IMG/VR virus record: IMGVR_UViG_3300035698_010479
Span: 62,001 to 126,000 of that record
Length of the DNA stretch: 64,000 bases
Direction: 5' to 3' (one strand)
Part shown: piece by piece, positions 9,637 to 60,477 of the stretch
Position numbering within the stretch: the first letter of the stretch is position 1
How the letters are laid out: the number at the start of each line of letters is the position of its first letter
The notes under the pieces: model-generated
The model's database searches: none
The model's input: only the letters and a program-made list of their open reading frames with translations
What the model was told of the DNA's origin: nothing
Translations under genes and position numbers: made by a program

Positions 9637-10578
9637 TTAAGAATCAAATAGGTAACTTAAACTTTGTTCATCATGTATACCTATTATTGCCTCTGCAAAT
9701 AAAGTAGCGGAGGATAATACTTCAATCTTTGTTGATAATTTTATAGATGTATTGTATATAGTATCTGTAACGTACAGTTTATCTATACTTGATCTCTCAA
9801 TATTACTTATAGCCTTGCCACTAAGTACAGGGTGGGTACAGTAACATTCAACAGATGCAGCACCATTATTTAGTAACACATTAGTAGCCTTTACTAATGT
9901 TCCACCAGAATCTACCATATCATCTGCGATTATACAGTGTTTATCTTTAACTTCACCTATCAAAAACATTTCTCCGATTTCAGATGGGCCTGTTCTCTGT
10001 TTGTATATCATTGCTACACTGCATCCTAATTTACCTGCATAACTTTTAGCAACTTTGATAGAACCAGCGTCTGGAGCGACTACGCATATACTATTCCCTG
10101 GATGATTGCTTTTTATATGAGGTACAAACACATTAAACATATGTAGGTTATCTACAGGTATATCAAAGAACCCAGATATTTGTGGACTATGTAATTCAGA
10201 CGTAAGTACTCTATCTGTGCCAGCAGTTTGTATGAGGTTGGCTACCACTTTTGCAGAAATAGGTACACGAGACATTACTTTTCTATCCTGCCTACTATAT
10301 GGATAGCAAGGTAACACTGTGGTAACTCTATAACAACTTGAACGTTTAAGGGCATCTAGTAGTAAAAATAACTCCATTAAATGTGTATCAGTTGTATTGC
10401 TTGCACCTTGAATTACAAACACATCCTTGTTACGTACATTTTCCTTTATTTCTACACGACATTCCCCATTACCGAATGTAGATGTTAACACACCTGTTAA
10501 TGGTACCCCTACTAAATTACTGATACTGTTTGCCAATGCTATATTGGCACTTCCAGAAATAATAGCTAATTCTTTCAT
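9637..10578 (-). CDS. prs: ribose-phosphate pyrophosphokinase
   Basis: FGNGE, YSRQDRK, LHSPQISGFFDIPVD, VAPDAG, DDMVDSGGT, THPVLS. Confidence 0.95.
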   Translation of the reverse strand: MKELAIISGSANIALANSISNLVGVPLTGVLTSTFGNGECRVEIKENVRNKDVFVIQGASNTTDTHLMELFLLLDALKRSSCYRVTTVLPCYPYSRQDRKVMSRVPISAKVVANLIQTAGTDRVLTSELHSPQISGFFDIPVDNLHMFNVFVPHIKSNHPGNSICVVAPDAGSIKVAKSYAGKLGCSVAMIYKQRTGPSEIGEMFLIGEVKDKHCIIADDMVDSGGTLVKATNVLLNNGAASVECYCTHPVLSGKAISNIERSSIDKLYVTDTIYNTSIKLSTKIEVLSSATLFAEAIIGIHDEQSLSYLFDS

Positions 10579-10947: not shown

Positions 10948-11520
10948 TTAAGCTATTACATCTACATCAGGCATACTACTTTCCAATTTAAGATGTGAGC
11001 CCGTTTCGTTCACTCTAAAGGTTTCAAACCGTACACTACCACTAGCAACTAAGTCTTTTATATGTTTCTGACTTTTACTTAATTTAGCACCACCTGTTTT
11101 AAATTCTATGAATATTACAGCATCATCCGTTACTTGAATACCGTCTACGGGATTAGCTAAAAATCTAAACTGCTTATGATTGTATGGATAGTCCCTAATA
11201 AATGGCATGAAATTTTCTGCCATTTGGCCTAAACGAACCTCAGAAGATTTTTTCTGAGATTCAATTTTTGTTGTGTTGTCCTGTAACCTGGTGATACCTA
11301 TATTCTGAGTATTGATTTCTGAACGTTGACTTAATATAACATTTTTCTGAACATCAATCAACTCAGTTAGCTCGGTTAATTTAGTATTAGTGTCATTATT
11401 CTTTTTATTAGCCTCCTGTAAATCAAGTTTAATTCTAAAAATAAATTTATTAATACTATAAACAAAAAATAATAACAGAGCACCTAATACCACTACAATA
11501 AATATAATATTTAGATTCAT
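10948..11520 (-). CDS. membrane-anchored Holliday-junction-resolvase-like endonuclease (Endonuc_Holl family)
   Basis: N-terminal TM helix, coiled coil, SSEVRLGQMAENFMPF, FRFLANPVDG, FIEFKTG. Confidence 0.82.
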   Translation of the reverse strand: MNLNIIFIVVVLGALLLFFVYSINKFIFRIKLDLQEANKKNNDTNTKLTELTELIDVQKNVILSQRSEINTQNIGITRLQDNTTKIESQKKSSEVRLGQMAENFMPFIRDYPYNHKQFRFLANPVDGIQVTDDAVIFIEFKTGGAKLSKSQKHIKDLVASGSVRFETFRVNETGSHLKLESSMPDVDVIA

Positions 11521-12113
11521 TACTTCCCGCTAGTTCTTGATGTAGTTACATAAGAAGTCATGGACGCGTAACCTTCTTGTACCCCTTTAACTGTAGCATT
11601 AAAAGAGAAAGTAGCTTCTGGGTTAAAAGAATATGTACGTGCAGTGAGGGCTACATCCTGATTAGCACCAATAAATACAAACTCCCAACCAAATTGTTCT
11701 TTTCGCTGTTCAATTAGAGATTTAACTTGTTCTGCTGTAAATTCTTTAGAAGAGTTCTCTTCCCCATCCGTTATAACGCAAACAATAACTTTGGCTGGTC
11801 TATCCTTAGCTTTCATTGAAACCACTTGCTGCCCTACCTTATTAATAACATTTGCTAAAGTATCATTTAAAGCGGTGGAGCCATTAGGTTTATATGTACA
11901 TGCATCAAGCAGTTTGATATCTTCGATAGGTTGATTATCTGCAATGTATTCAAAAGTATTATCAAACAGACATACGGTAACTAGTGCTTTACCTTTTACT
12001 TCCTTCTGAGCCTTAATAAAGTTATTAAAGCCATCAATAGCCCCCTGTTTAATAGCTGACATTGAACCACTCTTATCTACTACTGTTGCGATAAACGTTA
12101 AATTCTTTTTCAT
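11520..12113 (-). CDS. von Willebrand factor A domain protein
   Basis: MIDAS motif VDKSGSM, GSTALND, ITDGEENSS, FIGANQD. Confidence 0.88.
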   Translation of the reverse strand: MKKNLTFIATVVDKSGSMSAIKQGAIDGFNNFIKAQKEVKGKALVTVCLFDNTFEYIADNQPIEDIKLLDACTYKPNGSTALNDTLANVINKVGQQVVSMKAKDRPAKVIVCVITDGEENSSKEFTAEQVKSLIEQRKEQFGWEFVFIGANQDVALTARTYSFNPEATFSFNATVKGVQEGYASMTSYVTTSRTSGK

Positions 12114-12827
12114 TTAATTCTCCTTAATTTGTTTTTCTTCTTCTTCGTCATAGTCTAAGCGCTTATGATAAATATTTGAAATTTCAGAAGTTAATATTTT
12201 CTTTATTATTCTTAATTGACCTAAAGATAATATATCTAGTTGCTCATCTTCTATTAGACATCCAATAAGTTTGTCAATAGTAACTTTATATTCTTTCAAT
12301 TTACCGTTATTAGCAAGAGCCCTACAAGCACTCTCTACAACATCACAGCACATTAAAACACACGATTCTACAGAAGTGGGTTTAACAGACCTATATTTAT
12401 AATGATCTTCTATGTCTGCACCTTTGTATACCTCCTTGGCCTTTATCCAAATTGATTTAATAGTACTATTACCATGGTGTTCACTTACAATTTTTATTAC
12501 ACTTGGTGCAACATCCAACTGTACTAATTTTAACACACTGTCTGATAAATGTCTAGATATTAATTGAAAAGATACAACTGGATCTAACTTATCGTGTGCA
12601 TTAACACCAGCTATCTGATTTTCTATAAAATTATCTGGACCTATACATTTACCTATATCATGTAGGGTAGCAGCTAAGACAAGATCATCTGATTTCAAGC
12701 CTAATTCTTTTGCTAGTGGATCACAGAGCTGCGCAACATTTTGGCAGTGTCTAAATGTACCTGGTGCTATCTCTTTAAATCTATCTAATACATGTTCATT
12801 AATAGTCAAAAACTCTTTTGTATCCAT
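12114..12827 (-). CDS. stand-alone HD (HDIG) domain, PgpH/7TM-HD type phosphodiesterase-like
   Basis: TFRHCQNVA, LHDIGK, FIENQ, NAHDKL, EHHG, KPTSVES, CDVVESACRAL. Confidence 0.8.
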   Translation of the reverse strand: MDTKEFLTINEHVLDRFKEIAPGTFRHCQNVAQLCDPLAKELGLKSDDLVLAATLHDIGKCIGPDNFIENQIAGVNAHDKLDPVVSFQLISRHLSDSVLKLVQLDVAPSVIKIVSEHHGNSTIKSIWIKAKEVYKGADIEDHYKYRSVKPTSVESCVLMCCDVVESACRALANNGKLKEYKVTIDKLIGCLIEDEQLDILSLGQLRIIKKILTSEISNIYHKRLDYDEEEEKQIKEN

Positions 12828-12895
12828 TTAATTACCTTAGTATAAATTATTTTAGTAAGTACTGACACTACATCGTGTCAGCTACCAGAGGCGTC

Positions 12896-12924
12896 ATTAT
12901 AACAAATATATAATGTAGTGTCAA
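12896..12924 (-). promoter_or_regulatory. perfect-consensus sigma70 promoter
   Basis: TTGACA-17-TATAAT on the - strand upstream of the HD gene. Confidence 0.85.
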
Positions 12925-12986
12925 TACTAAATATACTCAATGTAAGTAAATAGATTATAATACGTATTGTCTATTTTTTAGTATCA

Positions 12987-13484
12987 CTATAAAAGAATTT
13001 CATATTTTTTAATAGGTAATTCGCAAAATACTGATAATTCACAAGCTACCTCGACAGCCTTTTCTACTCCGTGCCCTAAGTATAATGCAGCTAATGCAAA
13101 ATCATCTCCTGCACCTATGGCAGAATGGTCATATATTTCTTGTATGAAAAATCCTTCTGCTTGGAAAACATGGTTGTCTATTATGAAAATATGTGTGTTG
13201 TCTATAGACGATGAATCCGTTTTGGTTTTTTTCCAATCGGAAAATTCAGCTAGGAAATTTATTAGAGATGACTCTGTAGCCCGCTCTGGTCTTCTAGTAG
13301 AGCAAAAAACAAATAGTAGTGCACTTTCTTCGGCAGTACCAGTGCTTCCTATAGTCATACCATTTACTTGTATCAATTTAGAATAACTATTTTTGGATTT
13401 ATTTTGGGTCCATCCACGTACAGTTATGCTATCCGATGCTATGGAAATTTTTTCTTTACAAATATTAACCGCTACTACACTCAT
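12987..13484 (-). CDS. Ntn-hydrolase (HslV/proteasome beta-like) protein
   Basis: N-terminal (M)SVVAV, IASDS, AIGAGDDFALAAL, AVEVACELSVFC. Confidence 0.72.
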   Translation of the reverse strand: MSVVAVNICKEKISIASDSITVRGWTQNKSKNSYSKLIQVNGMTIGSTGTAEESALLFVFCSTRRPERATESSLINFLAEFSDWKKTKTDSSSIDNTHIFIIDNHVFQAEGFFIQEIYDHSAIGAGDDFALAALYLGHGVEKAVEVACELSVFCELPIKKYEILL

Positions 13485-13507: not shown

Positions 13508-14041
13508 TTACAGGTTAACTAAGTCAGAGTAAATCTCTTCAGAAGATCTTACCAATGTATATGACAATTTATTTTCCTTAAATAAATGAATCATAGTTTC
13601 ATGAACATTGTTCCTAAAAGTCTCATCATTATCTCTAATACCATCAACGACATTCCAATTAAAAAATAAAGGATCTAGTATATAAACTTTCTTATAGTAC
13701 ATTCTAATATGTGCTGCTACGTAATCCATAAGTAGTAGACTAATACTATTAGTGTTACCAAGTACAGTACTATAACATATAGGGTCCATTAAGCTTCTGT
13801 CTACGATTAGATAATCATAGCGATTCATTTTTTCTAGCTCTTTGGTAATTTGTTTAGTGGCTATCCAAGCCTGTGATCTATCATCAGCGTCTTGATTAAT
13901 AGGGAAAGGACATTCTCTAGCAAGTTCATTAATTACAGCTACATTCTTACCTAATTTTTTCAAAAATGAAGCTATACTAAAAGCCAAAGAACTTTTTCCA
14001 GTTCCATGGGTACCACTAACAGCTATAATTTTACTTGTCAT
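13508..14041 (-). CDS. P-loop NTPase, AAA_28/NadR-kinase-like
   Basis: SGTHGTGKS, INELARE, VDRSLMD, DGIRD. Confidence 0.8.
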   Translation of the reverse strand: MTSKIIAVSGTHGTGKSSLAFSIASFLKKLGKNVAVINELARECPFPINQDADDRSQAWIATKQITKELEKMNRYDYLIVDRSLMDPICYSTVLGNTNSISLLLMDYVAAHIRMYYKKVYILDPLFFNWNVVDGIRDNDETFRNNVHETMIHLFKENKLSYTLVRSSEEIYSDLVNL

Positions 14042-14243: not shown

Positions 14244-14759
14244 TTAACCCCCATTAGTGAATAATTGTGGATCTTCTGGCATAAAATCAAAAAAAGCTGG
14301 GTCTTGTGCTACCAAATAAGGTGCTGACACAGTCAGGCATCTATGATTCTCGTTAACTAAGTATTTATATTTAGGTTCTTTTCCCCAGATTCTTAATCTC
14401 TCTGTTATTATTTTTCTGCCTAGACCTTGCTGTATCATATTATTGAACTGGCGCTGAAATTTATATCTTATATATCTTATATAACCACTTCGCATGAATT
14501 CCCATATAACCTCATCTTTCTTTTCTATCATGTTGTCTGCAGTTGTAATTACTATGTAGCGATATCCTGTTAACTGTTCATATAATTTCTGCATAGTATA
14601 ACTGTAGTCAAGTGGCTCAATACCTATAATTATTACACCTAATTCAGTAACCTCAAAACAATCCGATAGGTTGGAGCCCAATGGTACCCGTTTATAGGGT
14701 ACCATAAAAGCTGAGAGCATCACAGATATTTCTGTTTGTAACTCCTCTAAACTATACAT
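14244..14759 (-). CDS. hypothetical protein
   Basis: 171-aa ORF coupled to the Clp ATPase gene. Confidence 0.75.
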   Translation of the reverse strand: MYSLEELQTEISVMLSAFMVPYKRVPLGSNLSDCFEVTELGVIIIGIEPLDYSYTMQKLYEQLTGYRYIVITTADNMIEKKDEVIWEFMRSGYIRYIRYKFQRQFNNMIQQGLGRKIITERLRIWGKEPKYKYLVNENHRCLTVSAPYLVAQDPAFFDFMPEDPQLFTNGG

Positions 14760-16695
14760 TAGCTACTTCCTTTAAAGCACCTTTCTGGTCGCTTTCTAGA
14801 TATGTAGGTGCCTTACTTGGTTTTTTGGAGAACTTGAATGTAACACCATTTTTTGCTGTACTTACTGTAACTATGGTATTAATATCTGTAGTACCCTTTA
14901 GTAGTTGTACTGCTAAAGGGGTAGATATATATCGTTCAATAGCTCTCTTTAAAGGTCTAGCACCATACTCTTTAGTAATACCTTTTTCGTATATAAAGTT
15001 ACATACTTTTTTATCAAAAAATATCTCTATATCTTTATATTTAGTTTTATTACTTTGTAAGTTAGTATTTAGTTTAAACAATTCGATATCAATGATTCTG
15101 AAATAGTCTTCTTTTGATAAGTCATTAAAGTAAATTATTTCATCTAATCTATTTAAAAATTCAGGTTTAAATTTCTTTTTTAGTGCTTGTTCCAAAGCTT
15201 GCTCTTTTTTAGCTTCTGTTACTACATTGACATCTCCAAAGCCAATAGTTTTTGATATACTAGCAATATTTTCTACACCTACATTAGATGTCATAATAAT
15301 TACTGTATCCTTAAAAGAAACTTTTGTACCTTTGTTATCTGTTAGTCTACCTTCTTCAAGCACCTGTAAAAGTAGTTGATATATTTTACTTGATGCTTTT
15401 TCTATTTCATCAAAAACTACCACACTAAATGGATTTTCAATTATAGCATTTGTTAAAAGGCCACCATTTTCGTATCCCTGATAACCATTTGGAGATCCTA
15501 TAAGTTTAGAATATTCATGATCTGCTGAATATTCAGAACAATCTATAGTTATCAAGTTATCACGGTCTTTTATCAATTCATTTGCAAGTATTTTTCCTGT
15601 TAAACTCTTCCCACAACCAGTAGATCCGGCAAACAAGAAAGAGCCGATAGGTTTAACTGGATCTTTAAGCCCTACACTAGCACGTTGTATAGCGTCAGTT
15701 AAACTAGCTACAACTTTATCTTGCCCTATAAGGGAGACTTTCATATTTGTAGCTAAATTTAAAAGGTCCTCTTCTGGAACGTCTGCAAAGACTTTCTTTT
15801 TCTTGTCCACTTTATTAGCAAACTGGTCCATAGCAGTAGCACCAGAAGACATAGTTTTCTTACCACTACCGCAATCAGTACAATCAGAAGGTTTTTTATC
15901 TTTGTTAGCTAGCTCCTGAGCATTCTCATAAGTCAGAAAAGGATTACAAGCTTGGCATATATCATATAGTTCTTTCATCAATAGTGGTGGTGATACTCTA
16001 GCTGGTACACCCATATTTTCTAGAACCTGAAACAAAGCTTCAAAGTCTTCGATACATAAAGTAACAACAAAAGTATTAAAGCTAACGCTACTATGAAAAA
16101 ATCTACCATTTATTAATTTACTTAAATCTTGCTCATTAAATACCTTCACAGATACATACCTGCCTATACGTTTCCACCATTTGTCTTTTGTGTTATATAT
16201 AGAATTGGTTGAAGTTTTATCCACAGGATTTCCTTGTTCATCAACAAAGCCATCCGCCAACTCCTTATTATCTGGTATAGTCACATCCGGTATATAGTCC
16301 CAAAGAGGGTTCTCTTCTAACGCTACCACTTCCTCCATATTAGTATCAGTAGTTTTTACTTTCAAAATATGATTTTTATTTATAACAATACTGGAATAAG
16401 CTAAATTTTTATTTTTAGAAAAAATTGCATCCAAGAAATTTGAACGTAATTTAAAAAAATCTAAATTTTTAGATAGTGTTTCGTCGCTTATTTTATGAAG
16501 AATTTGATTAATATTTGCTACACAAGTAGCAATTAAGTAATCATCATATAAGATCTTAGCAACAAGACCATCATCCTTAGCAAAAAAAGTTAGTTTATCT
16601 TCTATATCCTCTGATTTAATTTCTAAAATCAACAGGTTAAAATCTATTAATTCACAATAAACTTCGTGTACTTCGTAGTTAACGTTTTCAGTCAT
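14752..16695 (-). CDS. ClpA/B-type AAA+ ATPase with a single (D2) AAA module and an unfamiliar N-terminal region
   Basis: LIGQD, PIGSFLFAGSTGCGKS, DCSEY, LIGSPNGYQGY, FDEIEK, FKPEFLNRLD, YGARPLKR; no D1 Walker A seen. Confidence 0.88.
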   Translation of the reverse strand: MTENVNYEVHEVYCELIDFNLLILEIKSEDIEDKLTFFAKDDGLVAKILYDDYLIATCVANINQILHKISDETLSKNLDFFKLRSNFLDAIFSKNKNLAYSSIVINKNHILKVKTTDTNMEEVVALEENPLWDYIPDVTIPDNKELADGFVDEQGNPVDKTSTNSIYNTKDKWWKRIGRYVSVKVFNEQDLSKLINGRFFHSSVSFNTFVVTLCIEDFEALFQVLENMGVPARVSPPLLMKELYDICQACNPFLTYENAQELANKDKKPSDCTDCGSGKKTMSSGATAMDQFANKVDKKKKVFADVPEEDLLNLATNMKVSLIGQDKVVASLTDAIQRASVGLKDPVKPIGSFLFAGSTGCGKSLTGKILANELIKDRDNLITIDCSEYSADHEYSKLIGSPNGYQGYENGGLLTNAIIENPFSVVVFDEIEKASSKIYQLLLQVLEEGRLTDNKGTKVSFKDTVIIMTSNVGVENIASISKTIGFGDVNVVTEAKKEQALEQALKKKFKPEFLNRLDEIIYFNDLSKEDYFRIIDIELFKLNTNLQSNKTKYKDIEIFFDKKVCNFIYEKGITKEYGARPLKRAIERYISTPLAVQLLKGTTDINTIVTVSTAKNGVTFKFSKKPSKAPTYLESDQKGALKEVANV

Positions 16696-17626: not shown

Positions 17627-17655
17627 ATTATAACTCATTGTTCGTGATTTGTCAA
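17627..17655 (-). promoter_or_regulatory. perfect-consensus sigma70 promoter
   Basis: TTGACA-17-TATAAT on the - strand upstream of the Rad52-like gene. Confidence 0.85.
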
Positions 17656-20220: not shown

Positions 20221-20246
20221 TATTATACTCCTTATATTAATATGTT

Positions 20247-20321
20247 TGTTCCTAGTGAGAATCGAACTCACAACGAAACGCAGGTTTAGAATCTGCCGCT
20301 CTACCACTGAGCTATAGGAAC
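20247..20321 (-). tRNA. amber suppressor tRNA (anticodon CUA)
   Basis: GTTCCTA-TA-GCTC AGTGGTA GAGC-G-GCAGA TTCTAAA CCTGC-GTTTCGTT-GTGAG TTCGATT CTCAC-TAGGAAC-A. Confidence 0.85.
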
Positions 20322-20323
20322 AT

Positions 20324-24698: not shown

Positions 24699-25142
24699 TT
24701 ATTCACACCAGTTTTTTTCTTTTGTCCCACCATTATACTTAACGGCTAGGCCTTTGTCAAGTAAAATAGTAGCTAAGTCACCTTCGGCTGTTAAAACTTC
24801 TGCGACAATTCTAAAATATTTTCCTCGTCTAGTATTAAGAAGTGATACCTTGGTATGATCTCGCAGTATAACATATACAGCCTCTTTAGCCGCTAATGCA
24901 AGTTGATGCTCCTTTTCACATTTACTACGCATCTCAGGTGTATCAATACCAAATACACGTACTGATATTTTATAGCCAAATAACTCTGGTATGTCATTTA
25001 TATTTACAGTTAAAGTATCTCCATCATAATTACTAATAACTTCTACATCATAAAAATTTTCATATGTTTTTTCTGACGCATTACTATTATCATAACTACA
25101 AAAAGTACATAACAATAAAAATGATACTAATAGGCTTTTCAT
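24699..25142 (-). CDS. thermonuclease (SNase-like) with signal peptide
   Basis: YDGDT, VRVFGIDTPE, GKYFRIVA, GLAVKYNGG. Confidence 0.88.
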   Translation of the reverse strand: MKSLLVSFLLLCTFCSYDNSNASEKTYENFYDVEVISNYDGDTLTVNINDIPELFGYKISVRVFGIDTPEMRSKCEKEHQLALAAKEAVYVILRDHTKVSLLNTRRGKYFRIVAEVLTAEGDLATILLDKGLAVKYNGGTKEKNWCE

Positions 25143-31048: not shown

Positions 31049-31081
31049 AAGCTAAATCCCCCTTTTATGTTCAATATTATA

Positions 31082-31300
31082 CTAAATATTATCAGAGTTG
31101 TCAAGAAAAATTTCTGGTTCTTTTAAATTTTTCCCGCAAAACGGACAAAATAAAATAGGTATACCATAAGTATGTGTCTTATGGAAGGTACCCTCGTCAG
31201 ATATTTCAATCCAAGCCATTATTGTACCATAGTTAGAATATTTTTGAAACAAAAAAGGATGATCTATTAAAACATTTTTAAAATCTTCGCAACAATCCAT
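31082..31300 (-). CDS. small zinc-binding protein
   Basis: MDCC...FCPFCGKNL. Confidence 0.7.
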   Translation of the reverse strand: MDCCEDFKNVLIDHPFLFQKYSNYGTIMAWIEISDEGTFHKTHTYGIPILFCPFCGKNLKEPEIFLDNSDNI

Positions 31301-31352: not shown

Positions 31353-33209
31353 TCAAACAGAAGCTTGTGACTCTTCAGGGCCTTGTTGTGGTTGTTCGGC
31401 TGGTTGTGCTTGTGCGTATAGTTTTTCTGATATAGGGTGAAATGCTAAGTTAAGTTCCTCAATCTTTTTAGTAAGTTCTTCTACAGAGACATCTTTAGAA
31501 ATAAGTTCACGAATCTCTGATATTTTAATGGCTAGGTCGTCTTTTTCCTCTTCAGAAACCTTATCAGAGTTATCCTTAATAGTTTTCTCCATTTGATAAG
31601 CGGTATTTTCGGCTTGGTTTTTTGCTTCAATTAAACTACGTTTAGCTTTATCGGCCTCTGCATGTTCCTCTGCTTCTGCTACCATACGGGCAATATCATC
31701 TTTAGAAAGCCCTGAAGAAGATTCAATTTTTATTGACTGCTCTTTACCTGTACCTAAATCTTTTGCTGACACGGTTAAAATACCATTAGCGTCAATATTA
31801 AAACTAACTTCAACCTGTGGTACACCTCTTGGCGCTGGTGGGATACCTACCAAATCAAATCTGCCCAATGTTTTATTATCCTGCGCCATTTCACGCTCGC
31901 CCTGAATAACGTGTATGGAGACAGCGTTTTGATTGTCAACAGCTGTGCTAAAAACCTGGGTTCTCAATACAGGTATTGACGTATTTTTATCTATAATTCT
32001 GGTAGCTACACCACCTAGAGTTTCAATGCTAAAAGAAAGCGCCGTAACATCAAGTAGTAATACATCAGTAGTAACGCCTGCAATAATACTTGCCTGAATA
32101 GCAGCACCCTGTGCTACTACTTCATCAGGATTTACTGATTTATTTAACTTTTTATTAAAAAAATCTTCAACCACTTTTTGTACAGCAGGTATACGTGTAG
32201 ATCCACCCACTAAAATAATCTCATCAATACTATCTTTGGTTAGATGAGCATCATTTAACACGGTCTTACAAAGAACTAAGATTTTATCTACTAAATCAGA
32301 TGTCATACTATCAAACCTAGACCTAGTTAACTTAGTATTTAGATGTTTTGGACCAGAAGCATCCGCTGTGATGAATGGTATATTAATAGTTACCTCCATA
32401 GCAGAAGATAGCTCTTTCTTGGCTTTCTCAGCTTCATCTTTCAGGCGCTGAAGGGCCATATTATCATTACGCAGGTTAATACCTTCATTCTTTTTGAAGT
32501 CGTCTACCAACCAATTAACGATAACTTGGTCAAAATCAGTACCTCCAAGATAACTATTGCCGAATGTACCTATAACTTCAACAACATTATCACCTAAATC
32601 TAATATAGATGTATCACTGGTACCTGCACCAATGTCTACGATCATGACCTTTTCTTCTTTATCGCCTTCAAAGCCGTAAGCAAGTGCAGCAGCTGTAGGT
32701 TCATTAATTATACGTTTTATATCTAGCCCAGCTATCTTACCTGCATCTTTTGTAGCCTGTCTTTGGGCATCTGTAAAATACGCAGGTACAGTAACAACTG
32801 CTTCTGTTACTGTTTCACCTAAGTAATCCTCAGCGTATTTCTTCATCTCTGCTAATACAGCTGCAGATATTTCTACAGGTGACATTAATTTACCATCAAT
32901 ATTAATTAATACTTCACCGGAGGGACCCTCACTTAATTTAAAAGGTGCTATCTTTATAAAATCTTGAACTTCCTTATCCTTATATAAGCGGCCTATAAGT
33001 CTTTTTGCTTCATAGACTGTTCTTTCTGAGTTGGTGACAGCCTGTCGTTTAGCTGCACCACCTACTAATTTAGTGTCATTAGTAAATGCAACTACACTTG
33101 GGGTAGTTGAAGTACCATCACTAGAAAAAATAATTTTTGGTGTACCACTTTCCATAACTGAAACACATGAAAAGCCTGTTCCAAGGTCTATTCCAACAAT
33201 CTTTCCCAT
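31353..33209 (-). CDS. dnaK: Hsp70 chaperone DnaK
   Basis: [50 protein letters not shown]. Confidence 0.97.
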
Positions 33210-46420: not shown

Positions 46421-48148
46421 TTAACTACATCTCGAATAGCCACAGCCCTCGTTAACACACTTAATGCACCCCTCGGCATTTACCAGAGAAGGTTCTCCAC
46501 AAGTTGGGCACTTGTTATCATCCCCAACTAAAGCAAAAGCATCTACGTATTTACTTAAAACTCTAGAAATAGCTGTACTAAAATCAGAAATACTGCCATT
46601 TGTTTTTTTAAGTTGCTCTACTATATACTTTGGTAAAGCCCCATGTCTTAAAGCCAAGCTAAGTAATCTAGTCATACCCTTCTGCCCATCAGTCATTAAA
46701 ATAGCAGCAAGGTCTTTGTAAATAACTGGAGACCTTCGTATAACTACATCTAATTCGTATTTACCTTTACCTTGTTTTCTTATTATACCACTATTACAAG
46801 TTTTAGGCAAGTACAAATCTTCAGATGTGCCACAAAAAACCTCATAAGCTTTACCATCAAGTAGCCCAACAAGAACCGTCCACATTTCACCTTTTATAGA
46901 TGTATAAAAAATATCACAAGGTAACTCTTTAGGTCGCTTTGGTGCACAATTTGGAACTATACAAAAAGGTCTTGCCTCATCCTTACAGCCTGTTGCTGAC
47001 TTCTTCTCAAAGTTAGCCTCACTTGTTTTAGGATCTTCGAAAAGTAAAATACCCTCACGCGAACCATCGACATATACAGACACTGCTCTAACCCCGTGAT
47101 TATAAGCCTCCATATAGATAGTTTCTACATCCTTAACCGTAGCTGTAGCAGGCAAATTGTATGTACAACTAATAGCTGCATCTACCCACTTGTATACATT
47201 TCCCATTAATTTAATTTTCTGTAACGGGTCAATGTGATGAGCGGGTTTAAAAAAACCTTTTGGCAAATTTTTATTTATAATAGCTACCAAACCCAAACCT
47301 ATAGTTCCATCCTCATCCAAAACAGACCCAGGAAAAGCATCCAAGATCATATAATCACTACTACTTGGGTCGAGTTTACCAAGAACATATTGTTTTATTT
47401 TATCTGGTATAATAAAATAATGAGTATATTTTCCTTTGTCTATTGCTCTTGTCCTTCTCCAATAATACGGGCCTGGAAAAGGTTCTACACCAGATGAAAA
47501 ACAAGGTGTAGGAAAAGTACTAGACAATGACCCAGTAGGTGCTATAGACATATGGGCCATATTACGCATATGAGTTACTTTAGTATAGTCACCGCCGAAT
47601 AGCTCATCCACCACGTTCTTAAAATACGAAGAACTCATAAGCGCTTTAGGGCTACTTATCATCTCAAATGCTGGTGCATTACCTTTCTCTTTACCTAACT
47701 CTATTGACGCCTTAAATACCTCACATGAGTACCGCTTAAAAAATTCTCCTACATTCTTAATAGCATCATCAGAGTCATAGGGTAGGTCTTGCTTAAGTAA
47801 CCAACCATGTATGTTAGTAATACCAAGCCCCAGTTCTCTGGTCTGTTCCAAGATCCACGCTTGTTCTTTTAAGGGTGATAATTTATGGTATGCTTCATAA
47901 CTAACAACATTGTCCGATAGTCTTACAATATACGGAACAAGGAACGCTAGCTCCTGCGTATACTCTTCTATATCAATTGAAAACATTGCTTGGTTCGGTG
48001 AAAGTAAATTACATACACCATACGGTGGTAAACTTTTTTCCGAATTTTTTACTAACACACCTTCTACATAATAATTATGGTTATCTTGTACCTCAATATT
48101 ATATGTAGGCTTCTTTTCACTATTGTTTACTATACTAATTATTTTCAT
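46421..48148 (-). CDS. nrdJ: class II ribonucleotide reductase, C-terminal half, with N-terminal split-intein IntC
   Basis: IntC ...YNIEVQDNHNYYVEGVLVKN then SEKSLPPYGVCNL, LGITN, SIAPTGSLS, TSCPD-like region and terminal Zn ribbon (CPTCG...GCIKC). Confidence 0.9.
   Translation of the reverse strand: MKIISIVNNSEKKPTYNIEVQDNHNYYVEGVLVKNSEKSLPPYGVCNLLSPNQAMFSIDIEEYTQELAFLVPYIVRLSDNVVSYEAYHKLSPLKEQAWILEQTRELGLGITNIHGWLLKQDLPYDSDDAIKNVGEFFKRYSCEVFKASIELGKEKGNAPAFEMISSPKALMSSSYFKNVVDELFGGDYTKVTHMRNMAHMSIAPTGSLSSTFPTPCFSSGVEPFPGPYYWRRTRAIDKGKYTHYFIIPDKIKQYVLGKLDPSSSDYMILDAFPGSVLDEDGTIGLGLVAIINKNLPKGFFKPAHHIDPLQKIKLMGNVYKWVDAAISCTYNLPATATVKDVETIYMEAYNHGVRAVSVYVDGSREGILLFEDPKTSEANFEKKSATGCKDEARPFCIVPNCAPKRPKELPCDIFYTSIKGEMWTVLVGLLDGKAYEVFCGTSEDLYLPKTCNSGIIRKQGKGKYELDVVIRRSPVIYKDLAAILMTDGQKGMTRLLSLALRHGALPKYIVEQLKKTNGSISDFSTAISRVLSKYVDAFALVGDDNKCPTCGEPSLVNAEGCIKCVNEGCGYSRCS
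48044..48148 (-). mobile_element. split intein C-terminal fragment (35 aa)
   Basis: Intein block F/G ending in Asn, followed by Ser+1. Confidence 0.85.
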
Positions 48149-49163
48149 TATATAATCCTTCTATTTTTTGTATATACAACTCTATACTACCATAATATTT
48201 AATAATTGATTTATAACTAAATCTAGAATTAGGTCTACAATGCATTTCTTTATATAAAATTATAGTAGTCTCATCAAGTTTACCATATAATGCGTAAAGC
48301 TTTAAACCGTGTTTAATAAGTAAACTATACATTATTTTTTTCTTATCTTCTTCAGTATGCAGATGTCCGCTAGTACCATTTAATTTAGCTTTATAGTTAC
48401 ACCACGAACCCTTACAACTTGCTTTTTTGCAGTATTGCTTGTCTAATAAATCATATGTGTCTACAACATCTCCACAAAATATACATATATTTTGTTTCTT
48501 AACACCATATTTTTGTACACGTAAAATTTCCTGGTGTTTAATCTGTGCAGTACTTATACTAATTCTAAGTTCTGGCCTAGTTTTATGTGTAATTTGCATA
48601 GCAATACTACGCTTTTTACGAACCTCTGGTCTGCTTTGACACTCTAACATAAGCTTGGTGTGTGCTTCTAAACGCTCCTCGGAAAATTTAATACCGTATG
48701 ATGGGTTATTACTTCCAGACATATCATATGAATCAGACCGATCTATATACTCCAGCAAACAGCTTTTAAAGTCTTTGTGCTGTTTATAATAAGCTCTATT
48801 GTACGTTAAAGCGTTGTAGTTAATACCTAATTCCAAAAAATATTTTTTATACAGCGATAAATACGTAGTACATTCTTTAATAGAGTCTTTTATTTCAATA
48901 ATACTATTTAATATTGTATAAGTATTATCAATATAAATGAAAAAATCAGGTTTATAGGTACGATTATCAATAACATATACATGTTGTTCCATCAAGTAAT
49001 AAACATGTTGCTTATCTAAAAGTAAGCACTGTATTTTTTCTAACATTGACCTACAAAAAACACGTTTATTATCCCATGTGGTATGGTAACCGCAATAACC
49101 TCTTCCATTTTTAAAAGAACTTTTTTTTTGACTTCCTCCAACCGACATATTTACATCCTCCAT
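48135..49163 (-). CDS. free-standing homing-endonuclease-like protein (PD-(D/E)xK/TnsA-like domain plus NUMOD3-like motif)
   Basis: RSMLEK...YKPDF...IEIK; GSNNPSYGIKFSEE; located between the two nrdJ halves. Confidence 0.7.
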   Translation of the reverse strand: MEDVNMSVGGSQKKSSFKNGRGYCGYHTTWDNKRVFCRSMLEKIQCLLLDKQHVYYLMEQHVYVIDNRTYKPDFFIYIDNTYTILNSIIEIKDSIKECTTYLSLYKKYFLELGINYNALTYNRAYYKQHKDFKSCLLEYIDRSDSYDMSGSNNPSYGIKFSEERLEAHTKLMLECQSRPEVRKKRSIAMQITHKTRPELRISISTAQIKHQEILRVQKYGVKKQNICIFCGDVVDTYDLLDKQYCKKASCKGSWCNYKAKLNGTSGHLHTEEDKKKIMYSLLIKHGLKLYALYGKLDETTIILYKEMHCRPNSRFSYKSIIKYYGSIELYIQKIEGLYNENN

Positions 49164-49225
49164 AATTAATAAGTGTTATAGCATAGTAGAGTTAGTTAAA
49201 TATAGGGATGTAATTAATAGTATTA

Positions 49226-49534
49226 TTAAAGTTCCATCAAGTCATCTTCAAGAGTTAAATCTTTAGCCTGTACAATTCCTCTATTAGATGTGTAAAACTT
49301 ATGATCTGGTGTACATTCTATAGAGAGCCCACTACCTAGGTTTAAGGTTAGTGTTTTTACAGGTATACCCGCTTCACGAGCAAACACATCCACTATTGGC
49401 TTTAATTCATCAAGATTAGTACTTGTATTTCTGGATAAAGCCATGAAATCTTCCCCATCTAAAATGCGCTTTATAATATCCTTAATCAGTATATTGCCTT
49501 TATCTGTAAGTATATGATTTTCATCAGTAAAACA
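49226..49534 (-). mobile_element. split intein N-terminal fragment (102 aa)
   Basis: Block A CFTDENHILT, block B IECTPDHKFYT, ending AKDLTLEDDLMEL-stop. Confidence 0.88.
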
Positions 49535-50482
49535 GCAGGCGTTTGTAGAAATTATTTTAAATCTTGCATCACCAGTATCCAAATATATCTGATGAACCAT
49601 GGAACCTTCCCTTAGAAGGTCTATATATTGTACACCAGGTTCTGCGTGTTTAAACGCTTGTTCCGCTATTAAGTCGAATAACTCCGTAGCTTTTATTGTT
49701 TTAGATATACGCTTATATTTACTTCCTTCCTCAAACTCAAAAAATAATTCCCAACTAGCATCGGCCTTCACAGCTTCGATAAATTTATTAGAAACCTGCA
49801 CAGAAATATTGGCATTTTCCAAAACACCTTTTTCTGCTTTTGCTCGTACAAACTCATATATATCTGGGTGATGATCTTTTAAACTAACCAATATAGCAGG
49901 CTTTCTACCTTTCTGCCCCACCCATTCACCATTATCTACAAGTTTACATATCCATGGTACAGCACCTGTGGATTCTTCTGCAGCATTATTTACTGGAGCA
50001 CCTCTAGGGCGGAGTACTGAAGCATCAAAACCTAAACCCTGTCTAAAAGCTGCACACTTCATTATATCATAGTCACATTTAGAAATACTTTCCAAGCTAT
50101 CACCAGATAGAGGTAATGTGGTACAATTTAATAAGGATTTCAAGCTTGTAGCACCTACACCAGCAAGAACGCTTCCCCCTGGTCTAAACCAACCAAGCCA
50201 CATGAGTGCAAACCACCTATTACTGTATAGATCTTGCAGTTCTTTGGTTTTCTCCATAGTGGCTAACCCTGAAGATACACGCCAAAACACATCAGCAGGA
50301 GTTTCTATTTTGATATAAGGAGTGTCGGTGTCTGTTATTACTTTACCGTATTCATCCCATTTTGTACAATATTTAGTATCAAACATTTTATGAGCGTACT
50401 CATCTTCTGTAAAGTACTCTCTGCTGGAAATGTTCTTTACATTTTCGTACTTAATTAAATCTAACATCTCAATTGATAACAT
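49226..50482 (-). CDS. nrdJ: class II ribonucleotide reductase, N-terminal half, with C-terminal split-intein IntN
   Basis: FRPGGSVL, LLNC, RQGLGFDASVLRP, NANISV, AEPG, TNAC then intein CFT... Confidence 0.9.
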   Translation of the reverse strand: MLSIEMLDLIKYENVKNISSREYFTEDEYAHKMFDTKYCTKWDEYGKVITDTDTPYIKIETPADVFWRVSSGLATMEKTKELQDLYSNRWFALMWLGWFRPGGSVLAGVGATSLKSLLNCTTLPLSGDSLESISKCDYDIMKCAAFRQGLGFDASVLRPRGAPVNNAAEESTGAVPWICKLVDNGEWVGQKGRKPAILVSLKDHHPDIYEFVRAKAEKGVLENANISVQVSNKFIEAVKADASWELFFEFEEGSKYKRISKTIKATELFDLIAEQAFKHAEPGVQYIDLLREGSMVHQIYLDTGDARFKIISTNACCFTDENHILTDKGNILIKDIIKRILDGEDFMALSRNTSTNLDELKPIVDVFAREAGIPVKTLTLNLGSGLSIECTPDHKFYTSNRGIVQAKDLTLEDDLMEL

Positions 50483-56269: not shown

Positions 56270-57385
56270 TTAAAGTAACTCTAAAAATAACTTACCAATA
56301 ACTTCCGATGAAAAATTATCCATCAGATTACTACGTAGTAAATCTCCTCTTGACTGGGCATCTTCGTAATTATTATACACATACCTAGCTAATAGCGCAC
56401 CGTGCGTAGGAGAAGCTTCAGCCCAATTCATGCTACCAAGATACCAAGGCGAGAAAGGCATACCAGACACAGGTGTCTCTACATAATCAACAAGGTAGCT
56501 ATTATCCTCTGTCAAATATTGACTAACACCTCCAAAACCAGTAGCTATTACAGGATTACCAGAGGCGCCAGCATTAGCTGTACTCATGCCCCAACCCTCT
56601 CCTCTGTCCAGGGTAATATAACAGTCGCACCTTTTATGTAATGCTGTAATTTCTTCCTCGCTTAACATGTCCAATATCAAGTAAATTGGGGGGTACTTTG
56701 GTAAAACAATCATCTGTTTTAGTCTTTTTATTGTCGATCTAATAGCATCCCTTTCAGGGTTACTGTAGTTACTACCGTATGTTTTTAAAACTAAGGCTAC
56801 ATTTTCGTCCTCTTGAAAAGCTGTCCAGAAAGCTTTTATAGTGGACAATGGGTTTTTTCGTTCTGTCCATTGATTTATATTATAAAATAAAAACTTATTA
56901 GGGTCTTCGATACTTAATACTGTACTACAATCTTCATTTTTATCAGGATTGAATAAATCAACTACGTGTGGCACAACATAAATAGGTATAGTAACACCAC
57001 TAGACTCAAATACATCTTTATTCCATTTACATGGTACAAATACTTTGTCTACTGTTGTATTTATGTACTCTGGCCAAGATGGGTGTAAACTATCAGTCTC
57101 CCAAACTGTGTAACCAACGTTAAACTTACTCTCCTCACGATAAGACTTCCAGAATTCAGGTGTGGTATGTATAACAACCGTATTATATTGAATATCTTTA
57201 TTAATTAGTGATAATATAATTTCAGAATCTTCACCTAAATCAGGCTTAGCTTCTTCAAATGATATAGGGCTTACTGTGAGTGGTATACCTTGTTTATGTA
57301 ATGCTATTATATAACCACGTGCAGCTTTTGCATACCCAGAATTATCCAAGCATGGTGCTATATATTTAATACCTGTGATTTTCAT
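56270..57385 (-). CDS. GT-B glycosyltransferase (family 4-like)
   Basis: SGYAKAA, YTVWET, ERKN, EGWGMSTANAGASG, ATGFGG. Confidence 0.88.
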   Translation of the reverse strand: MKITGIKYIAPCLDNSGYAKAARGYIIALHKQGIPLTVSPISFEEAKPDLGEDSEIILSLINKDIQYNTVVIHTTPEFWKSYREESKFNVGYTVWETDSLHPSWPEYINTTVDKVFVPCKWNKDVFESSGVTIPIYVVPHVVDLFNPDKNEDCSTVLSIEDPNKFLFYNINQWTERKNPLSTIKAFWTAFQEDENVALVLKTYGSNYSNPERDAIRSTIKRLKQMIVLPKYPPIYLILDMLSEEEITALHKRCDCYITLDRGEGWGMSTANAGASGNPVIATGFGGVSQYLTEDNSYLVDYVETPVSGMPFSPWYLGSMNWAEASPTHGALLARYVYNNYEDAQSRGDLLRSNLMDNFSSEVIGKLFLELL

Positions 57386-57390
57386 AATAA

Positions 57391-57777
57391 TTAAATCCCC
57401 CTCTTATAAAATTTACGTAATACGTAATCTGTAGGTGACACAACACAGCTATAATTAAGTGTATTGATATTAAAAACCCCAACCTGTTCATCTGTTCTAG
57501 ATACTGCTCTATGAATACCGCTTGTTTTTATAGTAAAAAAATCTACACTAAAGTGGTTATTATCAGAGTAGTTGTCAAACAGTTGCCAATTATACAGTAC
57601 TAAACCACACTCCTCTTCACATTCGCGTACCATAGCCTCATAAGAAGTTTCATTTTCTTCTATTTTTCCACCCACACCGTTAAGCTTACCTAACTGCCAA
57701 ATAGGTCTCTGTTTCCTAATAAGTAATGTGTTTTCATGAGTGTCATCAAAAATAATACCTACTACATATTTAATCAT
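57391..57777 (-). CDS. NUDIX hydrolase
   Basis: GGKIEENETSYEAMVRECEEECG Nudix box. Confidence 0.92.
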   Translation of the reverse strand: MIKYVVGIIFDDTHENTLLIRKQRPIWQLGKLNGVGGKIEENETSYEAMVRECEEECGLVLYNWQLFDNYSDNNHFSVDFFTIKTSGIHRAVSRTDEQVGVFNINTLNYSCVVSPTDYVLRKFYKRGI

Positions 57778-57780
57778 GCG

Positions 57781-58257
57781 CTACCCCTTCCTATGATAAA
57801 TTCTAAAGTCTAATACCCCACTAACAGTGCTACTATTTAATTCCCATATATTCGCATCTACCCCGTGCCAGTATATGTCACCGGTATATTCAGCGTCAAT
57901 TCTAGTAATATCTAAAATATTAGCATAGTCTATATAGGCATTAAATATCTCAGCACCACCTATAACATATATATTAGTATAGTCTTTGAATTTTGTCAAC
58001 ACATATTTTAGATGATCAAATACAAAGGCCTTACCTTCTGTGTAAAAAGTTAGGTCGCGTGTAAGAACCACATTAGGTCTATTAGGTAAAGGTTTTATAG
58101 ATATGGACTCCCAGGTTCTTCTGCCCATTACTACGGGATATCCAGTAGTAATTTTTTTAAATCTTTTAACATCCTCTGGGTGGTGCCACGGTATAGCGTT
58201 TGCACAACCCATTAAATTATTTTTATCTAGTGCTACTAAAAATATAACTTTTGGCAT
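57781..58257 (-). CDS. folA: dihydrofolate reductase
   Basis: IPWH, VMGRRTWESI, LPNRPNVVLT, IGGAEI. Confidence 0.95.
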   Translation of the reverse strand: MPKVIFLVALDKNNLMGCANAIPWHHPEDVKRFKKITTGYPVVMGRRTWESISIKPLPNRPNVVLTRDLTFYTEGKAFVFDHLKYVLTKFKDYTNIYVIGGAEIFNAYIDYANILDITRIDAEYTGDIYWHGVDANIWELNSSTVSGVLDFRIYHRKG

Positions 58258-58265
58258 AAATTACC

Positions 58266-59132: not shown

Positions 59133-59153
59133 AAGTACCCCTTAATATGGTTA

Positions 59154-59193: not shown

Positions 59194-59203
59194 AGTAATA
59201 AAT

Positions 59204-60472: not shown

Positions 60473-60477
60473 AAATC

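What the first reader, a model, noticed from the sequence alone, without database searches (positions are those of the whole stretch)
12114..12924. Stand-alone PgpH-like HD domain under a perfect sigma70 promoter: candidate anti-signalling enzyme
Seen: only the cytoplasmic HD domain of the 7TM-HD family (H...HDIGK...FIENQ...HD...HHG...D), with no membrane region, directly behind TTGACA-17-TATAAT. Known: PgpH HD domains hydrolyse c-di-AMP. Inference: an early phage enzyme degrading cyclic dinucleotide or immune second messengers (c-di-AMP homeostasis, CBASS-type signals).
Basis: partly seen in the sequence, partly recalled or inferred. Interest (0 to 1): 0.62.

Follow-up and report, generated by a model that had tools for sequence, protein, structure and literature searches.

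The report
Phage stand-alone PgpH-type HD phosphodiesterase

Summary
Window 12114..12827 (-) encodes a 237-aa soluble protein that matches the whole crystallised HD domain of Listeria PgpH (E 8.7e-30). Its predicted fold matches PDB 4S1B/4S1C (TM 0.80-0.91). It keeps all seven metal ligands and the catalytic lysine, and it has no membrane segment. A perfect TTGACA-17-TATAAT promoter with an extended TG lies 68 nt upstream and is conserved in relatives.

The window comes from a 228-kb IMG/VR phage record found in salt-lake metagenomes. The protein belongs to a clade of more than 100 stand-alone homologues. Every context I inspected was a large or T4-like phage contig. The clade separates from bacterial full-length PgpH with 99% branch support and has no counterpart among deposited phage genomes or viral structure models.

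The same genome holds a 33-36% identical paralogue. It sits between a RelA/SpoT-type (p)ppGpp hydrolase and an NMNAT-Nudix/Nampt NAD+ salvage pair.

My best reading (0.55) is an early-expressed, unregulated c-di-AMP phosphodiesterase that collapses host c-di-AMP signalling. The main rival (0.25) is the same chemistry aimed at immune cyclic oligonucleotides. Substrate, timing and host are inferred, not shown. I rate it a new variant of a known kind.

The parts
12919..12924 (-). -35 hexamer TTGACA
   Evidence: conserved in L003/L006
12896..12904 (-). extended -10 (TGT-TATAAT), 17-nt spacer to the -35
   Evidence: conserved as TGG-TATAAT in L003
12853..12887 (-). stem-loop at the 5' end of the predicted leader (core CUGACAC/GUGUCAG). 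Its 3' arm is also one arm of a 21-nt inverted repeat whose other arm (12913-12933) covers the -35
   Evidence: MFE -16.3 kcal/mol, z -3.1. A 5'-proximal hairpin also forms in L003 (weak, z -0.4) and L007 (z -3.7) with different sequences. Inverted repeat:
12834..12839 (-). Shine-Dalgarno-like UAAGGU, 7 nt before the ATG
   Evidence: read from the sequence
12114..12827 (-). CDS, 237 aa: stand-alone PgpH-type HD phosphodiesterase. Metal ligands H27, H56, D57, H93, H117, H118, D162; catalytic K60
11520..12113 (-). vWA-domain protein. Its ATG directly follows the HD stop codon (probably co-transcribed). The linkage is conserved in close relatives only
10948..11520 (-). Endonuc_Holl (PF10107)-like protein; its start overlaps the vWA stop. 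Third gene of the apparent operon
12987..13484 (-). upstream neighbour, an HslV-like peptidase with no TM region. This shows the HD gene is not the 3' half of a split 7TM-HD gene
13508..14041 (-). AAA_28 P-loop kinase (the Pfam family I recall as including the NadR ribosylnicotinamide-kinase domain); context only
9637..10578 (-). ribose-phosphate pyrophosphokinase (Prs). It supplies PRPP for the phage Nampt encoded beside the paralogue; context only

Best explanation
The gene encodes a soluble, two-metal HD phosphodiesterase derived from the cytoplasmic catalytic domain of the bacterial membrane enzyme PgpH. It has lost the 7TM sensor module. Host sigma70 RNA polymerase most likely transcribes it from its own consensus promoter soon after infection. 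The enzyme then most likely hydrolyses the host's 3',3'-c-di-AMP to linear 5'-pApA without regulation. This would collapse c-di-AMP signalling, which controls potassium and osmolyte uptake, cell-wall homeostasis and related functions. That could be especially relevant in a salt-lake host. The same genome holds a paralogue next to a small RelA/SpoT-type (p)ppGpp hydrolase. As I recall from the original PgpH study, which I could not read here, ppGpp inhibits PgpH. Removing ppGpp would then keep the phosphodiesterase active, so the phage would erase two host alarm or homeostasis messengers together. Shown here: domain identity, fold, an intact catalytic set, phage-specific family, promoter and its conservation, and gene neighbourhoods. 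Inferred: substrate, product, timing, physiological consequence, and synergy with the alarmone hydrolase.
For: The sequence matches the PgpH HD domain over its full length, E 8.7e-30, while HD-GYP and YqeK score E of 0.14 or worse. The AlphaFold model has pLDDT 95. Foldseek's top four PDB hits are all 4S1B/4S1C, TM 0.80-0.91 and rmsd 1.8-2.6; the next fold, HD-GYP, has TM below 0.5. The PgpH metal ligands H514, H543, D544, H580, H604, H605 and D648 (PMC8177086) and catalytic K547 (PMC12072042) align to H27, H56, D57, H93, H117, H118, D162 and K60. Each is at least 98% conserved in 123 stand-alone homologues, including the paralogue. Every residue at least 97% invariant in 89 bacterial PgpH HD domains is kept in the phage family except G97 to S and F126 to I. 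PgpH is reported to be specific for c-di-AMP and not to cleave c-di-GMP (PMC8177086). The stand-alone proteins form one side of a branch with 99% SH-aLRT support. All inspected contexts are phage-like. The promoter is 12/12 and conserved. [quoted passage not shown]
Against: No enzymology was done. Two positions nearly invariant in bacteria differ in the phage family, and there is a 3-residue insertion at 175-177; either could shift specificity. The host is unknown, so I could not check whether it makes c-di-AMP. The nearest named DnaK and Prs homologues hint only weakly at Desulfobacterota, at 60% and 50% identity. Neighbours such as a SAM lyase, gp30.3 and NAD+ salvage genes fit an anti-defence role as well as a homeostasis role. 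The paralogue is missing beside the alarmone hydrolase in the nearest relative G001, so the pairing is not obligatory. No RNA data were found.
Confidence: 0.55

Rival explanations
1. Same fold and chemistry, but the selected target is an immune second messenger: CBASS cyclic di- or trinucleotides, type III CRISPR cyclic oligoadenylates, or 2',3'-c-di-AMP. On this reading the protein is a counter-defence nuclease analogous to Acb1, Apyc1 or AcrIII-1.
For: The family is confined to phages and spread patchily across unrelated large-phage backbones, as accessory or anti-defence genes usually are. Its neighbours include a SAM lyase, T4 gp30.3-like genes, an alarmone hydrolase and the NMNAT-Nudix + Nampt NAD+ reconstitution pair. 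Two divergent paralogues in one genome suggest diversified substrates. Iyer et al. predicted that HD-superfamily phosphodiesterases of jumbo phages counter nucleotide-based immunity (PMC7824862). Family-specific substitutions and a small insertion exist.
Against: The residues conserved in c-di-AMP-specific bacterial PgpH are almost all retained, and PgpH is reported not to cleave c-di-GMP. No known anti-CBASS or ring-nuclease fold is matched. Degrading c-di-AMP-like molecules would trigger Panoptes-type guards.
Confidence: 0.25
2. A housekeeping nucleotide or RNA-end phosphohydrolase for phage nucleic-acid metabolism, not a signalling enzyme. Possible substrates are pApA or nanoRNA, 2',3'-cyclic phosphate ends, or (d)NTPs.
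For: The HD superfamily is chemically diverse (PMC8177086). The genome is rich in nucleotide and RNA-repair genes: RNA ligase, Ro60/TROVE, RNR, Prs and a tRNA cluster.
Against: The specific full-length match in sequence and fold is to PgpH, not to dNTPase, YqeK, RNase Y or 2',3'-cNPase-type HD proteins, which score E of 0.1 or worse or TM below 0.5. PgpH-specific motifs outside the metal site (FxENQ, NxHD, Y145, R223, Y226) are conserved.
Confidence: 0.12
3. A catalytically dead binder (a sponge for a nucleotide), or a non-functional remnant of a captured host gene. On this reading the promoter match is incidental.
For: Phage sponges for cyclic nucleotides exist.
Against: All eight catalytic residues are at least 98% conserved across more than 120 homologues down to 33% identity. 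The promoter is conserved in relatives and enriched about 30-fold over shuffles. The open frame is intact, and contig fragments from four salt-lake metagenome runs covering parts of the region are identical.
Confidence: 0.03

Closest known systems
Listeria monocytogenes PgpH (Lmo1466) HD domain, PDB 4S1B/4S1C; bacterial 7TMR-HD c-di-AMP phosphodiesterases
   Same: Full-length HD-domain homology at 31-38% identity, the same fold (TM up to 0.91), all seven metal ligands, the catalytic lysine, and nearly all family-invariant residues.
   Different: No extracellular domain and no 7TM module. Not in a phoH-pgpH-ybeY operon (compare). Encoded by phages. Forms its own clade. Has G97S and F126I substitutions and a 3-residue insertion.
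HD-GYP and HD-alarmone phosphodiesterases predicted in jumbo phages (Iyer et al. 2021, PMC7824862)
   Same: HD-superfamily enzymes in jumbo phages, proposed to destroy nucleotide messengers. An alarmone-type HD hydrolase is indeed encoded beside the paralogue.
   Different: This protein is PgpH-type, not HD-GYP: it has no GYP motif, HD-GYP structures score E 0.14 or TM below 0.5, and it gives no HD_4 match. A PgpH-type domain does not appear in the passages of that paper that I retrieved.
Phage anti-signalling nucleases Acb1 (2H phosphoesterase), Apyc1 (metallo-beta-lactamase fold) and AcrIII-1 ring nuclease
   Same: The proposed logic is the same: a small soluble phage enzyme that degrades a cyclic nucleotide messenger.
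   Different: The fold and catalytic mechanism are unrelated, and no similarity appears in the PDB or BFVD searches. The expected substrate is a housekeeping messenger rather than an infection-induced one.
Soluble stand-alone bacterial c-di-AMP phosphodiesterases (DhhP/Pde2-type DHH-DHHA1; AtaC)
   Same: Soluble single-domain architecture proposed to act on c-di-AMP.
   Different: Different superfamilies (DHH and AtaC-type rather than HD), and cellular rather than viral.

Membership tests
HD metal-dependent phosphohydrolase superfamily (PF01966 / TIGR00277 HDIG) | H...HD...D metal-binding motif and a profile match above the curated cut-off | tested here: met
   Pfam HD 55.7 bits (cut-off 22). 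HDIG 51.7 bits (cut-off 27.6).
PgpH-type c-di-AMP phosphodiesterase (7TMR-HD family) | Homology to the PgpH HD domain over its whole length, and the same fold | tested here: met
   E 8.7e-30 over residues 7-221 of 222 of 4S1B. Foldseek TM 0.80-0.91, rmsd 1.8 A.
PgpH-type c-di-AMP phosphodiesterase (7TMR-HD family) | Binuclear-metal ligands H514, H543, D544, H580, H604, H605, D648 and catalytic K547 | tested here: met
   They align to H27, H56, D57, H93, H117, H118, D162 and K60. Each is at least 98% conserved in the phage family.
PgpH-type c-di-AMP phosphodiesterase (7TMR-HD family) | N-terminal extracellular domain plus a seven-transmembrane receptor module (PF07698) | tested here: not met
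   The 237-aa protein has only an HD match and no hydrophobic segment. The upstream ORF is an HslV-like peptidase.
PgpH-type c-di-AMP phosphodiesterase (7TMR-HD family) | Typical bacterial phoH-pgpH-ybeY operon context | tested here: not met
   The neighbours are HslV-like, vWA and Endonuc_Holl genes. The bacterial arrangement is seen in contaminant record L102.
PgpH-type c-di-AMP phosphodiesterase (7TMR-HD family) | Hydrolysis of c-di-AMP to 5'-pApA; inhibition by ppGpp | not testable with these tools
   Needs enzymology.
HD-GYP c-di-GMP/cGAMP phosphodiesterases | Extended HD-GYP signature (HHExxDGxGYP) and the HD-GYP fold | tested here: not met
   No GYP or HH..DG motif. 4MCW scores E 0.14. 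HD-GYP structures have TM below 0.5.
RelA/SpoT-type (p)ppGpp hydrolase (HD_4) | Match to HD_4 / spoT_relA profiles | tested here: not met
   No HD_4 hit for this protein. The neighbour of the paralogue does match: HD_4 2.3e-11 and spoT_relA 2.9e-14.
Known phage anti-CBASS/anti-Pycsar/ring nucleases (Acb1, Apyc1, AcrIII-1) | 2H, metallo-beta-lactamase or DUF1874 fold | tested here: not met
   Every significant structural match is an HD-domain protein. BFVD gives nothing at E <= 0.001, and the weak top rows are HD-type hydrolases. There is no PHROG match.
Bacterial sigma70-type promoter | TTGACA and TATAAT hexamers, 17-nt spacer, extended TG, position upstream of a gene, conservation | tested here: met
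   12/12 with TG. Enrichment of 5 observed against 0.17 expected. Conserved in L003/L006 and near-consensus in L007, L011, L012 and L015. The transcription start and timing were not measured.

The most novel reading that the evidence does not exclude
Large phages carry a dedicated two-enzyme module: a soluble PgpH-derived c-di-AMP phosphodiesterase plus a small alarmone hydrolase. It erases the host's c-di-AMP and (p)ppGpp pools at the onset of infection. The purpose would be to take over osmotic, potassium and stringent-response physiology rather than to evade immunity. This would be the first virus-encoded c-di-AMP-specific phosphodiesterase. It would also be a natural trigger or selective force for guard systems such as Panoptes that monitor cyclic-nucleotide depletion.
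Probability: 0.4. Interest if true: 0.75.

Novelty: new variant of a known kind. Interest (0 to 1): 0.63.

Why it matters
c-di-AMP is an essential and toxic-in-excess messenger that controls potassium and osmolyte uptake and cell-wall homeostasis in many bacterial phyla. No viral enzyme dedicated to it has been characterised in the literature I could search. A phage-only clade of unregulated PgpH catalytic domains would show that phages manipulate this housekeeping messenger. The clade has over 100 clusters at 90% identity and sits in jumbo and T4-like phages, sometimes beside an alarmone hydrolase. It would extend the catalogue of counter-nucleotide enzymes beyond the 2H, MBL and ring-nuclease folds. 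It would also supply soluble, easily expressed tools for depleting c-di-AMP in cells, and it would bear on how depletion-sensing defences such as Panoptes are triggered.

Tried and rejected
- **DNA search of deposited phages:** blastn of the locus found no match.
- **tblastn of deposited phages:** eight hits at about 30% identity. The two I inspected (H2, H8) are bacterial DNA in UNVERIFIED records, with ORFs of 732 and 490 aa followed by a roughly 158-aa ORF that I read by size and position as ybeY. They are not phage homologues.
- **PHROGs:** no family for the HD protein.
- **BFVD viral structure library:** no PgpH-like model.
- **Original PgpH paper:** not held, so base-contact residues could not be compared.
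- **The search for related loci with the wide alignment:** failed. With the narrower alignment, the genome-contig scan returned mostly Treponema full-length PgpH. That result is an artefact of the search patterns, so I did not use it for host inference.
- **The listing of cluster members:** gave no taxonomy.
- **The genome search 'relatives':** not available for virus records.
- **Host inference from DnaK and Prs:** only a weak lean to Desulfobacterota at 50-60% identity. I treat it as a hint, not a result.
- **Rfam:** no c-di-AMP or other riboswitch in the window or the paralogue region.
- **Phage-encoded diadenylate cyclase or sigma-70 region 2 factor:** none found.
- **RNA runs:** none hold the locus, so expression is untested. 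Laid contigs were short, identical fragments with no variants to analyse.
- **TAG recoding, suggested by a CTA-anticodon tRNA:** not supported.
- **Moraphage lineage paper:** checked. Its DnaK genes are Flavobacteriaceae-like, so I saw no evidence that it is the same lineage.

Full report
**1. Observation**

The minus strand of window 12114..12827 carries a 237-aa ORF. Pfam gives only the HD domain (E 7.4e-15) and NCBIfam gives HDIG.

By sequence against all PDB chains, the only strong match is the crystallised HD domain of Listeria monocytogenes PgpH (Lmo1466, 4S1B/4S1C). It scores E 8.7e-30 and aligns to residues 7-221 of 222. The next hits, HD-GYP and YqeK, score E 0.14 or worse.

The protein has no hydrophobic segment. 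Its maximum Kyte-Doolittle 19-mer mean is 1.28, whereas full-length PgpH-like hits show 6-8 segments above 1.6. The gene upstream is an HslV-like peptidase. This is therefore not the tail of a split 7TM gene.

The promoter is real as a sequence feature. TTGACA-17-TATAAT lies at 12924..12896 (-) with TG before the -10, scoring 12/12. The window contains five such perfect sites against 0.17 expected, and 0 of 100 shuffles reach five. The whole genome contains six, all on the minus strand.

**2. What the sequence belongs to**

The window is bases 62001-126000 of a 228,458-bp IMG/VR virus record with an estimated completeness of 86%. G+C is about 33%. The window carries tRNAs, a family A DNA polymerase, ribonucleotide reductase, DnaK, a ClpB-like ATPase and Prs.

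Near-identical DNA occurs only in salt-lake metagenome runs. No deposited phage genome resembles the locus. The DNA polymerase has no close cultured relative.

**3. The protein family**

A word-indexed search found more than 100 clusters of stand-alone proteins of 227-276 aa, at 33-81% identity. Many lie on contigs of 50-264 kb.

An exhaustive HMMER search of 1.84 billion representatives listed 21 stand-alone representatives first. After these came full-length PgpH proteins of about 700 aa at 32-38% identity, always matching through their C-terminal HD domain.

In a maximum-likelihood tree of 123 stand-alone sequences and 89 HD domains cut from full-length proteins, the stand-alone set is one side of a branch with 99% SH-aLRT support.

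Every context I inspected is phage-like:
- Close relatives L003, L006 and L007 share the syntenic block ClpB-like, AAA_28, HslV-like, HD, vWA, Endonuc_Holl, Prs, MetAP.
- Distant members sit in otherwise unrelated backbones. These include T4-like regions with gp30.3, HD and NAD-dependent ligase (L011, L012, L016), a region with gp32 (L099), one with NrdD/NrdG and endonuclease V (L100), and one next to a SAM lyase (L010).

The only hits in 50,697 deposited phage records were about 30% identical. The two I inspected are bacterial DNA in unverified records, where the ORF is 732 or 490 aa and is followed by a ybeY-sized ORF. The viral structure library BFVD holds no similar model, and PHROGs has no family for the protein.

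**4. Is it an enzyme?**

The reported PgpH metal ligands are H514, H543, D544, H580, H604, H605 and D648 (PMC8177086). K547 is reported to stabilise and protonate the leaving group (PMC12072042). Using the alignment, these map to H27, H56, D57, H93, H117, H118, D162 and K60. Each is at least 98% conserved in 123 stand-alone homologues.

I then compared 89 bacterial HD domains with the phage family. Every column at least 97% invariant in bacteria is retained in the phage family. These columns are G23, H27, H56, D57, G59, K60, E69, N70, N76, H78, S86, H93, H117, H118, G119, Y145, P150, D162, E165, R223 and Y226.

There are two exceptions: bacterial Gly becomes Ser at position 97, and bacterial Phe becomes Ile at position 126. 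The phage family also has a 3-residue insertion at 175-177.

AlphaFold2 with an 88-sequence alignment gives pLDDT 95 and pTM 0.90. Foldseek puts 4S1C/4S1B first (TM 0.80-0.91, rmsd 1.8-2.6 A) and HD-GYP proteins far behind (TM below 0.5). There is no GYP motif.

I conclude that the protein is an active two-metal phosphodiesterase of the PgpH type. Because PgpH is reported to be specific for c-di-AMP and the conserved pocket is retained, 3',3'-c-di-AMP is the most likely substrate. This is an inference. I could not obtain the original paper or the coordinates to compare the base-contact residues.

**5. Expression signals**

The -35, the 17-nt spacing, the TG extension and the -10 are identical in L003 and L006. 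Near-consensus promoters (10-11/12) lie 50-68 nt upstream of the start codon in L007, L011, L012 and L015.

The genome shows no sigma-70 region 2 protein. This is consistent with reliance on host sigma70 for such promoters. 'Early' is an inference from the promoter type and was not measured.

The predicted leader begins with a stable hairpin at 12853-12887 (-16.3 kcal/mol, z -3.1). L003 and L007 also form 5'-proximal hairpins, with different sequences (z -0.4 and -3.7). The 3' arm of the window hairpin is part of a 21-nt inverted repeat whose other arm covers the -35. The significance of that repeat is unknown.

The stop codon of the HD gene abuts the ATG of a vWA protein. The stop of the vWA gene in turn overlaps the start of an Endonuc_Holl-like gene. 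This suggests one transcript, though only close relatives keep the linkage.

**6. Paralogue and neighbourhood**

About 16 kb upstream in the genome lies a 239-aa paralogue (G000 57741-58460, which is L018:13741-14460). It is 33-36% identical and has all catalytic residues. It falls in a different subclade of the stand-alone family, together with P0140.

The paralogue sits between two kinds of gene:
- Upstream is a 176-aa RelA/SpoT-type hydrolase (HD_4 2.3e-11, spoT_relA 2.9e-14).
- Downstream are a bifunctional NMNAT-Nudix and a Nampt. This is the gene pair of the phage NAD+ reconstitution route via NMN.
- A Ro60/TROVE gene lies nearby.

An HD_4-type hydrolase also lies within about 1 kb of the HD gene in L016 and L010. 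Their HD proteins are 76% identical to each other, so I count this as two independent lineages showing the pairing.

The pairing is not obligatory. The nearest relative G001 has the alarmone hydrolase followed by a 74-aa ORF and a 308-aa ORF, which by its size I take to be the NMNAT-Nudix, with no HD paralogue between them. The 98%-complete G002 has one HD gene and no such hydrolase.

**7. Mechanism and rivals**

*Best explanation (0.55).* The protein is an unregulated soluble c-di-AMP phosphodiesterase, made from a strong host-type promoter, that collapses host c-di-AMP signalling.
- The 7TM sensor that gates the bacterial enzyme is gone.
- From my own recollection of the original PgpH study, which I could not read here, ppGpp inhibits PgpH. 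A co-encoded alarmone hydrolase would then keep the enzyme active.
- In a salt lake, c-di-AMP control of potassium and osmolyte transport is likely to matter. That last point rests on established knowledge of c-di-AMP physiology and is not tested here.

*Rival 1 (0.25).* The real target is an immune messenger from CBASS or type III CRISPR, or 2',3'-c-di-AMP. The phage-only distribution, the accessory-gene behaviour, the anti-defence neighbours and the two paralogues favour this reading. The near-complete retention of PgpH-invariant residues counts against it.

*Rival 2 (0.12).* The protein is a housekeeping nucleotide or RNA-end hydrolase.

*Rival 3 (0.03).* The protein is an inactive binder or remnant. 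This is contradicted by the conservation of catalytic residues.

**8. Host**

The host remains unknown. The consensus -35/-10 promoters and strong Shine-Dalgarno sequences argue against a Bacteroidota host; that rests on established knowledge of promoter types. Two phage PEP-CTERM proteins suggest an exosortase-bearing Gram-negative host.

The nearest named DnaK homologues are mostly Desulfobacterota, at about 60% identity. The Prs homologues are mixed, at about 50% identity. I treat this as a weak hint only.

**9. Comparison with what is known, and novelty**

The closest known protein is the PgpH HD domain. This protein works like it by every sequence and fold criterion. It fails the family's architectural criteria: it has no 7TM module and no phoH-ybeY operon context.

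The idea that jumbo phages carry HD-superfamily phosphodiesterases against nucleotide messengers was put forward for HD-GYP and HD-alarmone enzymes (PMC7824862). Characterised phage anti-signalling nucleases use other folds. In the held literature I found no report of a phage-encoded PgpH-type enzyme.

I therefore class it as a new variant of a known kind. It is of moderate to high interest, pending enzymology.
Noticed in passing
L018:12905-17409 (G000 56905-61409, just upstream of the window): A cluster of RelA/SpoT-type small alarmone hydrolase, second PgpH-type HD paralogue, NMNAT-Nudix and Nampt (the NAD+ reconstitution pair). Together with Prs and an AAA_28 kinase near the window copy, both HD genes sit among nucleotide and NAD+ salvage genes.
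   Followed up: partly
L018:9562-9708 and L018:13448-13576; Ro60/TROVE gene at L018:10316-11761: Two over-long tRNA-model hits (147 and 129 nt). One lies just upstream of a phage Ro60/TROVE homologue and could be a YrlA-like Y RNA with a tRNA-like module. The other lies between the alarmone hydrolase and the HD paralogue.
   Followed up: no
L018:6469-6707: A group I intron (Rfam RF00028, 65.6 bits) in the tRNA-rich region upstream of the window.
   Followed up: no
L018:3688-4350 and L018:5358-6014: Two phage-encoded proteins ending in a PEP-CTERM sorting motif. This hints at an exosortase-bearing Gram-negative host.
   Followed up: no
window 20246-20322 (-): A tRNA with anticodon CTA (amber-suppressor type; ARAGORN calls it Pyl). 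A genome-wide test showed that reading through TAG gains no more ORF length than reading through TGA, so stop-codon recoding is not indicated.
   Followed up: partly
window 46421-50482 (-): The ribonucleotide reductase large subunit is split into two ORFs (418 and 575 aa). An intein-splicing match lies at the end of the first, and a 342-aa ORF sits between them. This is probably an intein or homing-endonuclease insertion.
   Followed up: no
window 12896-12924, 17627-17655, 24732-24760, 31076-31104, 61764-61792 (all -); also G000 131940-131968 (-): Six perfect TTGACA-N17-TATAAT promoters in 228 kb, all on one strand. They precede varied targets, including a tRNA cluster, a PD-(D/E)XK nuclease gene and the HD gene. 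They probably form the strongest host-RNAP promoter set of this phage.
   Followed up: partly
window 12853-12873 and 12913-12933: A 21-nt inverted repeat (86% complementary, 39 nt apart) brackets the core promoter of the HD gene. One arm covers the -35 and the other lies in the leader hairpin. It could be an operator pair. It is only weakly conserved in L003.
   Followed up: partly
G000:C1:171769-194235 (-), outside the window: A single open frame of 7,488 codons (about 22 kb), far larger than any other ORF in the genome.
   Followed up: no
window 12987-13484, 14752-16695, 31353-33209 (all -): The phage encodes its own proteostasis set: an HslV-like peptidase, a ClpB-like AAA+ ATPase with a long novel N-terminal region, and a full-length DnaK. 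The nearest named bacterial DnaK homologues are Desulfobacterota, at about 60% identity.
   Followed up: partly
L102 (OR846595.1 50432-57091) and L103 (MT835511.1 2454-9122): Two 'phage' database records hold what look like bacterial chromosomal segments: a PgpH-matching ORF of 732 or 490 aa followed by a roughly 158-aa ORF, consistent with pgpH-ybeY. This indicates contamination of these UNVERIFIED records.
   Followed up: yes
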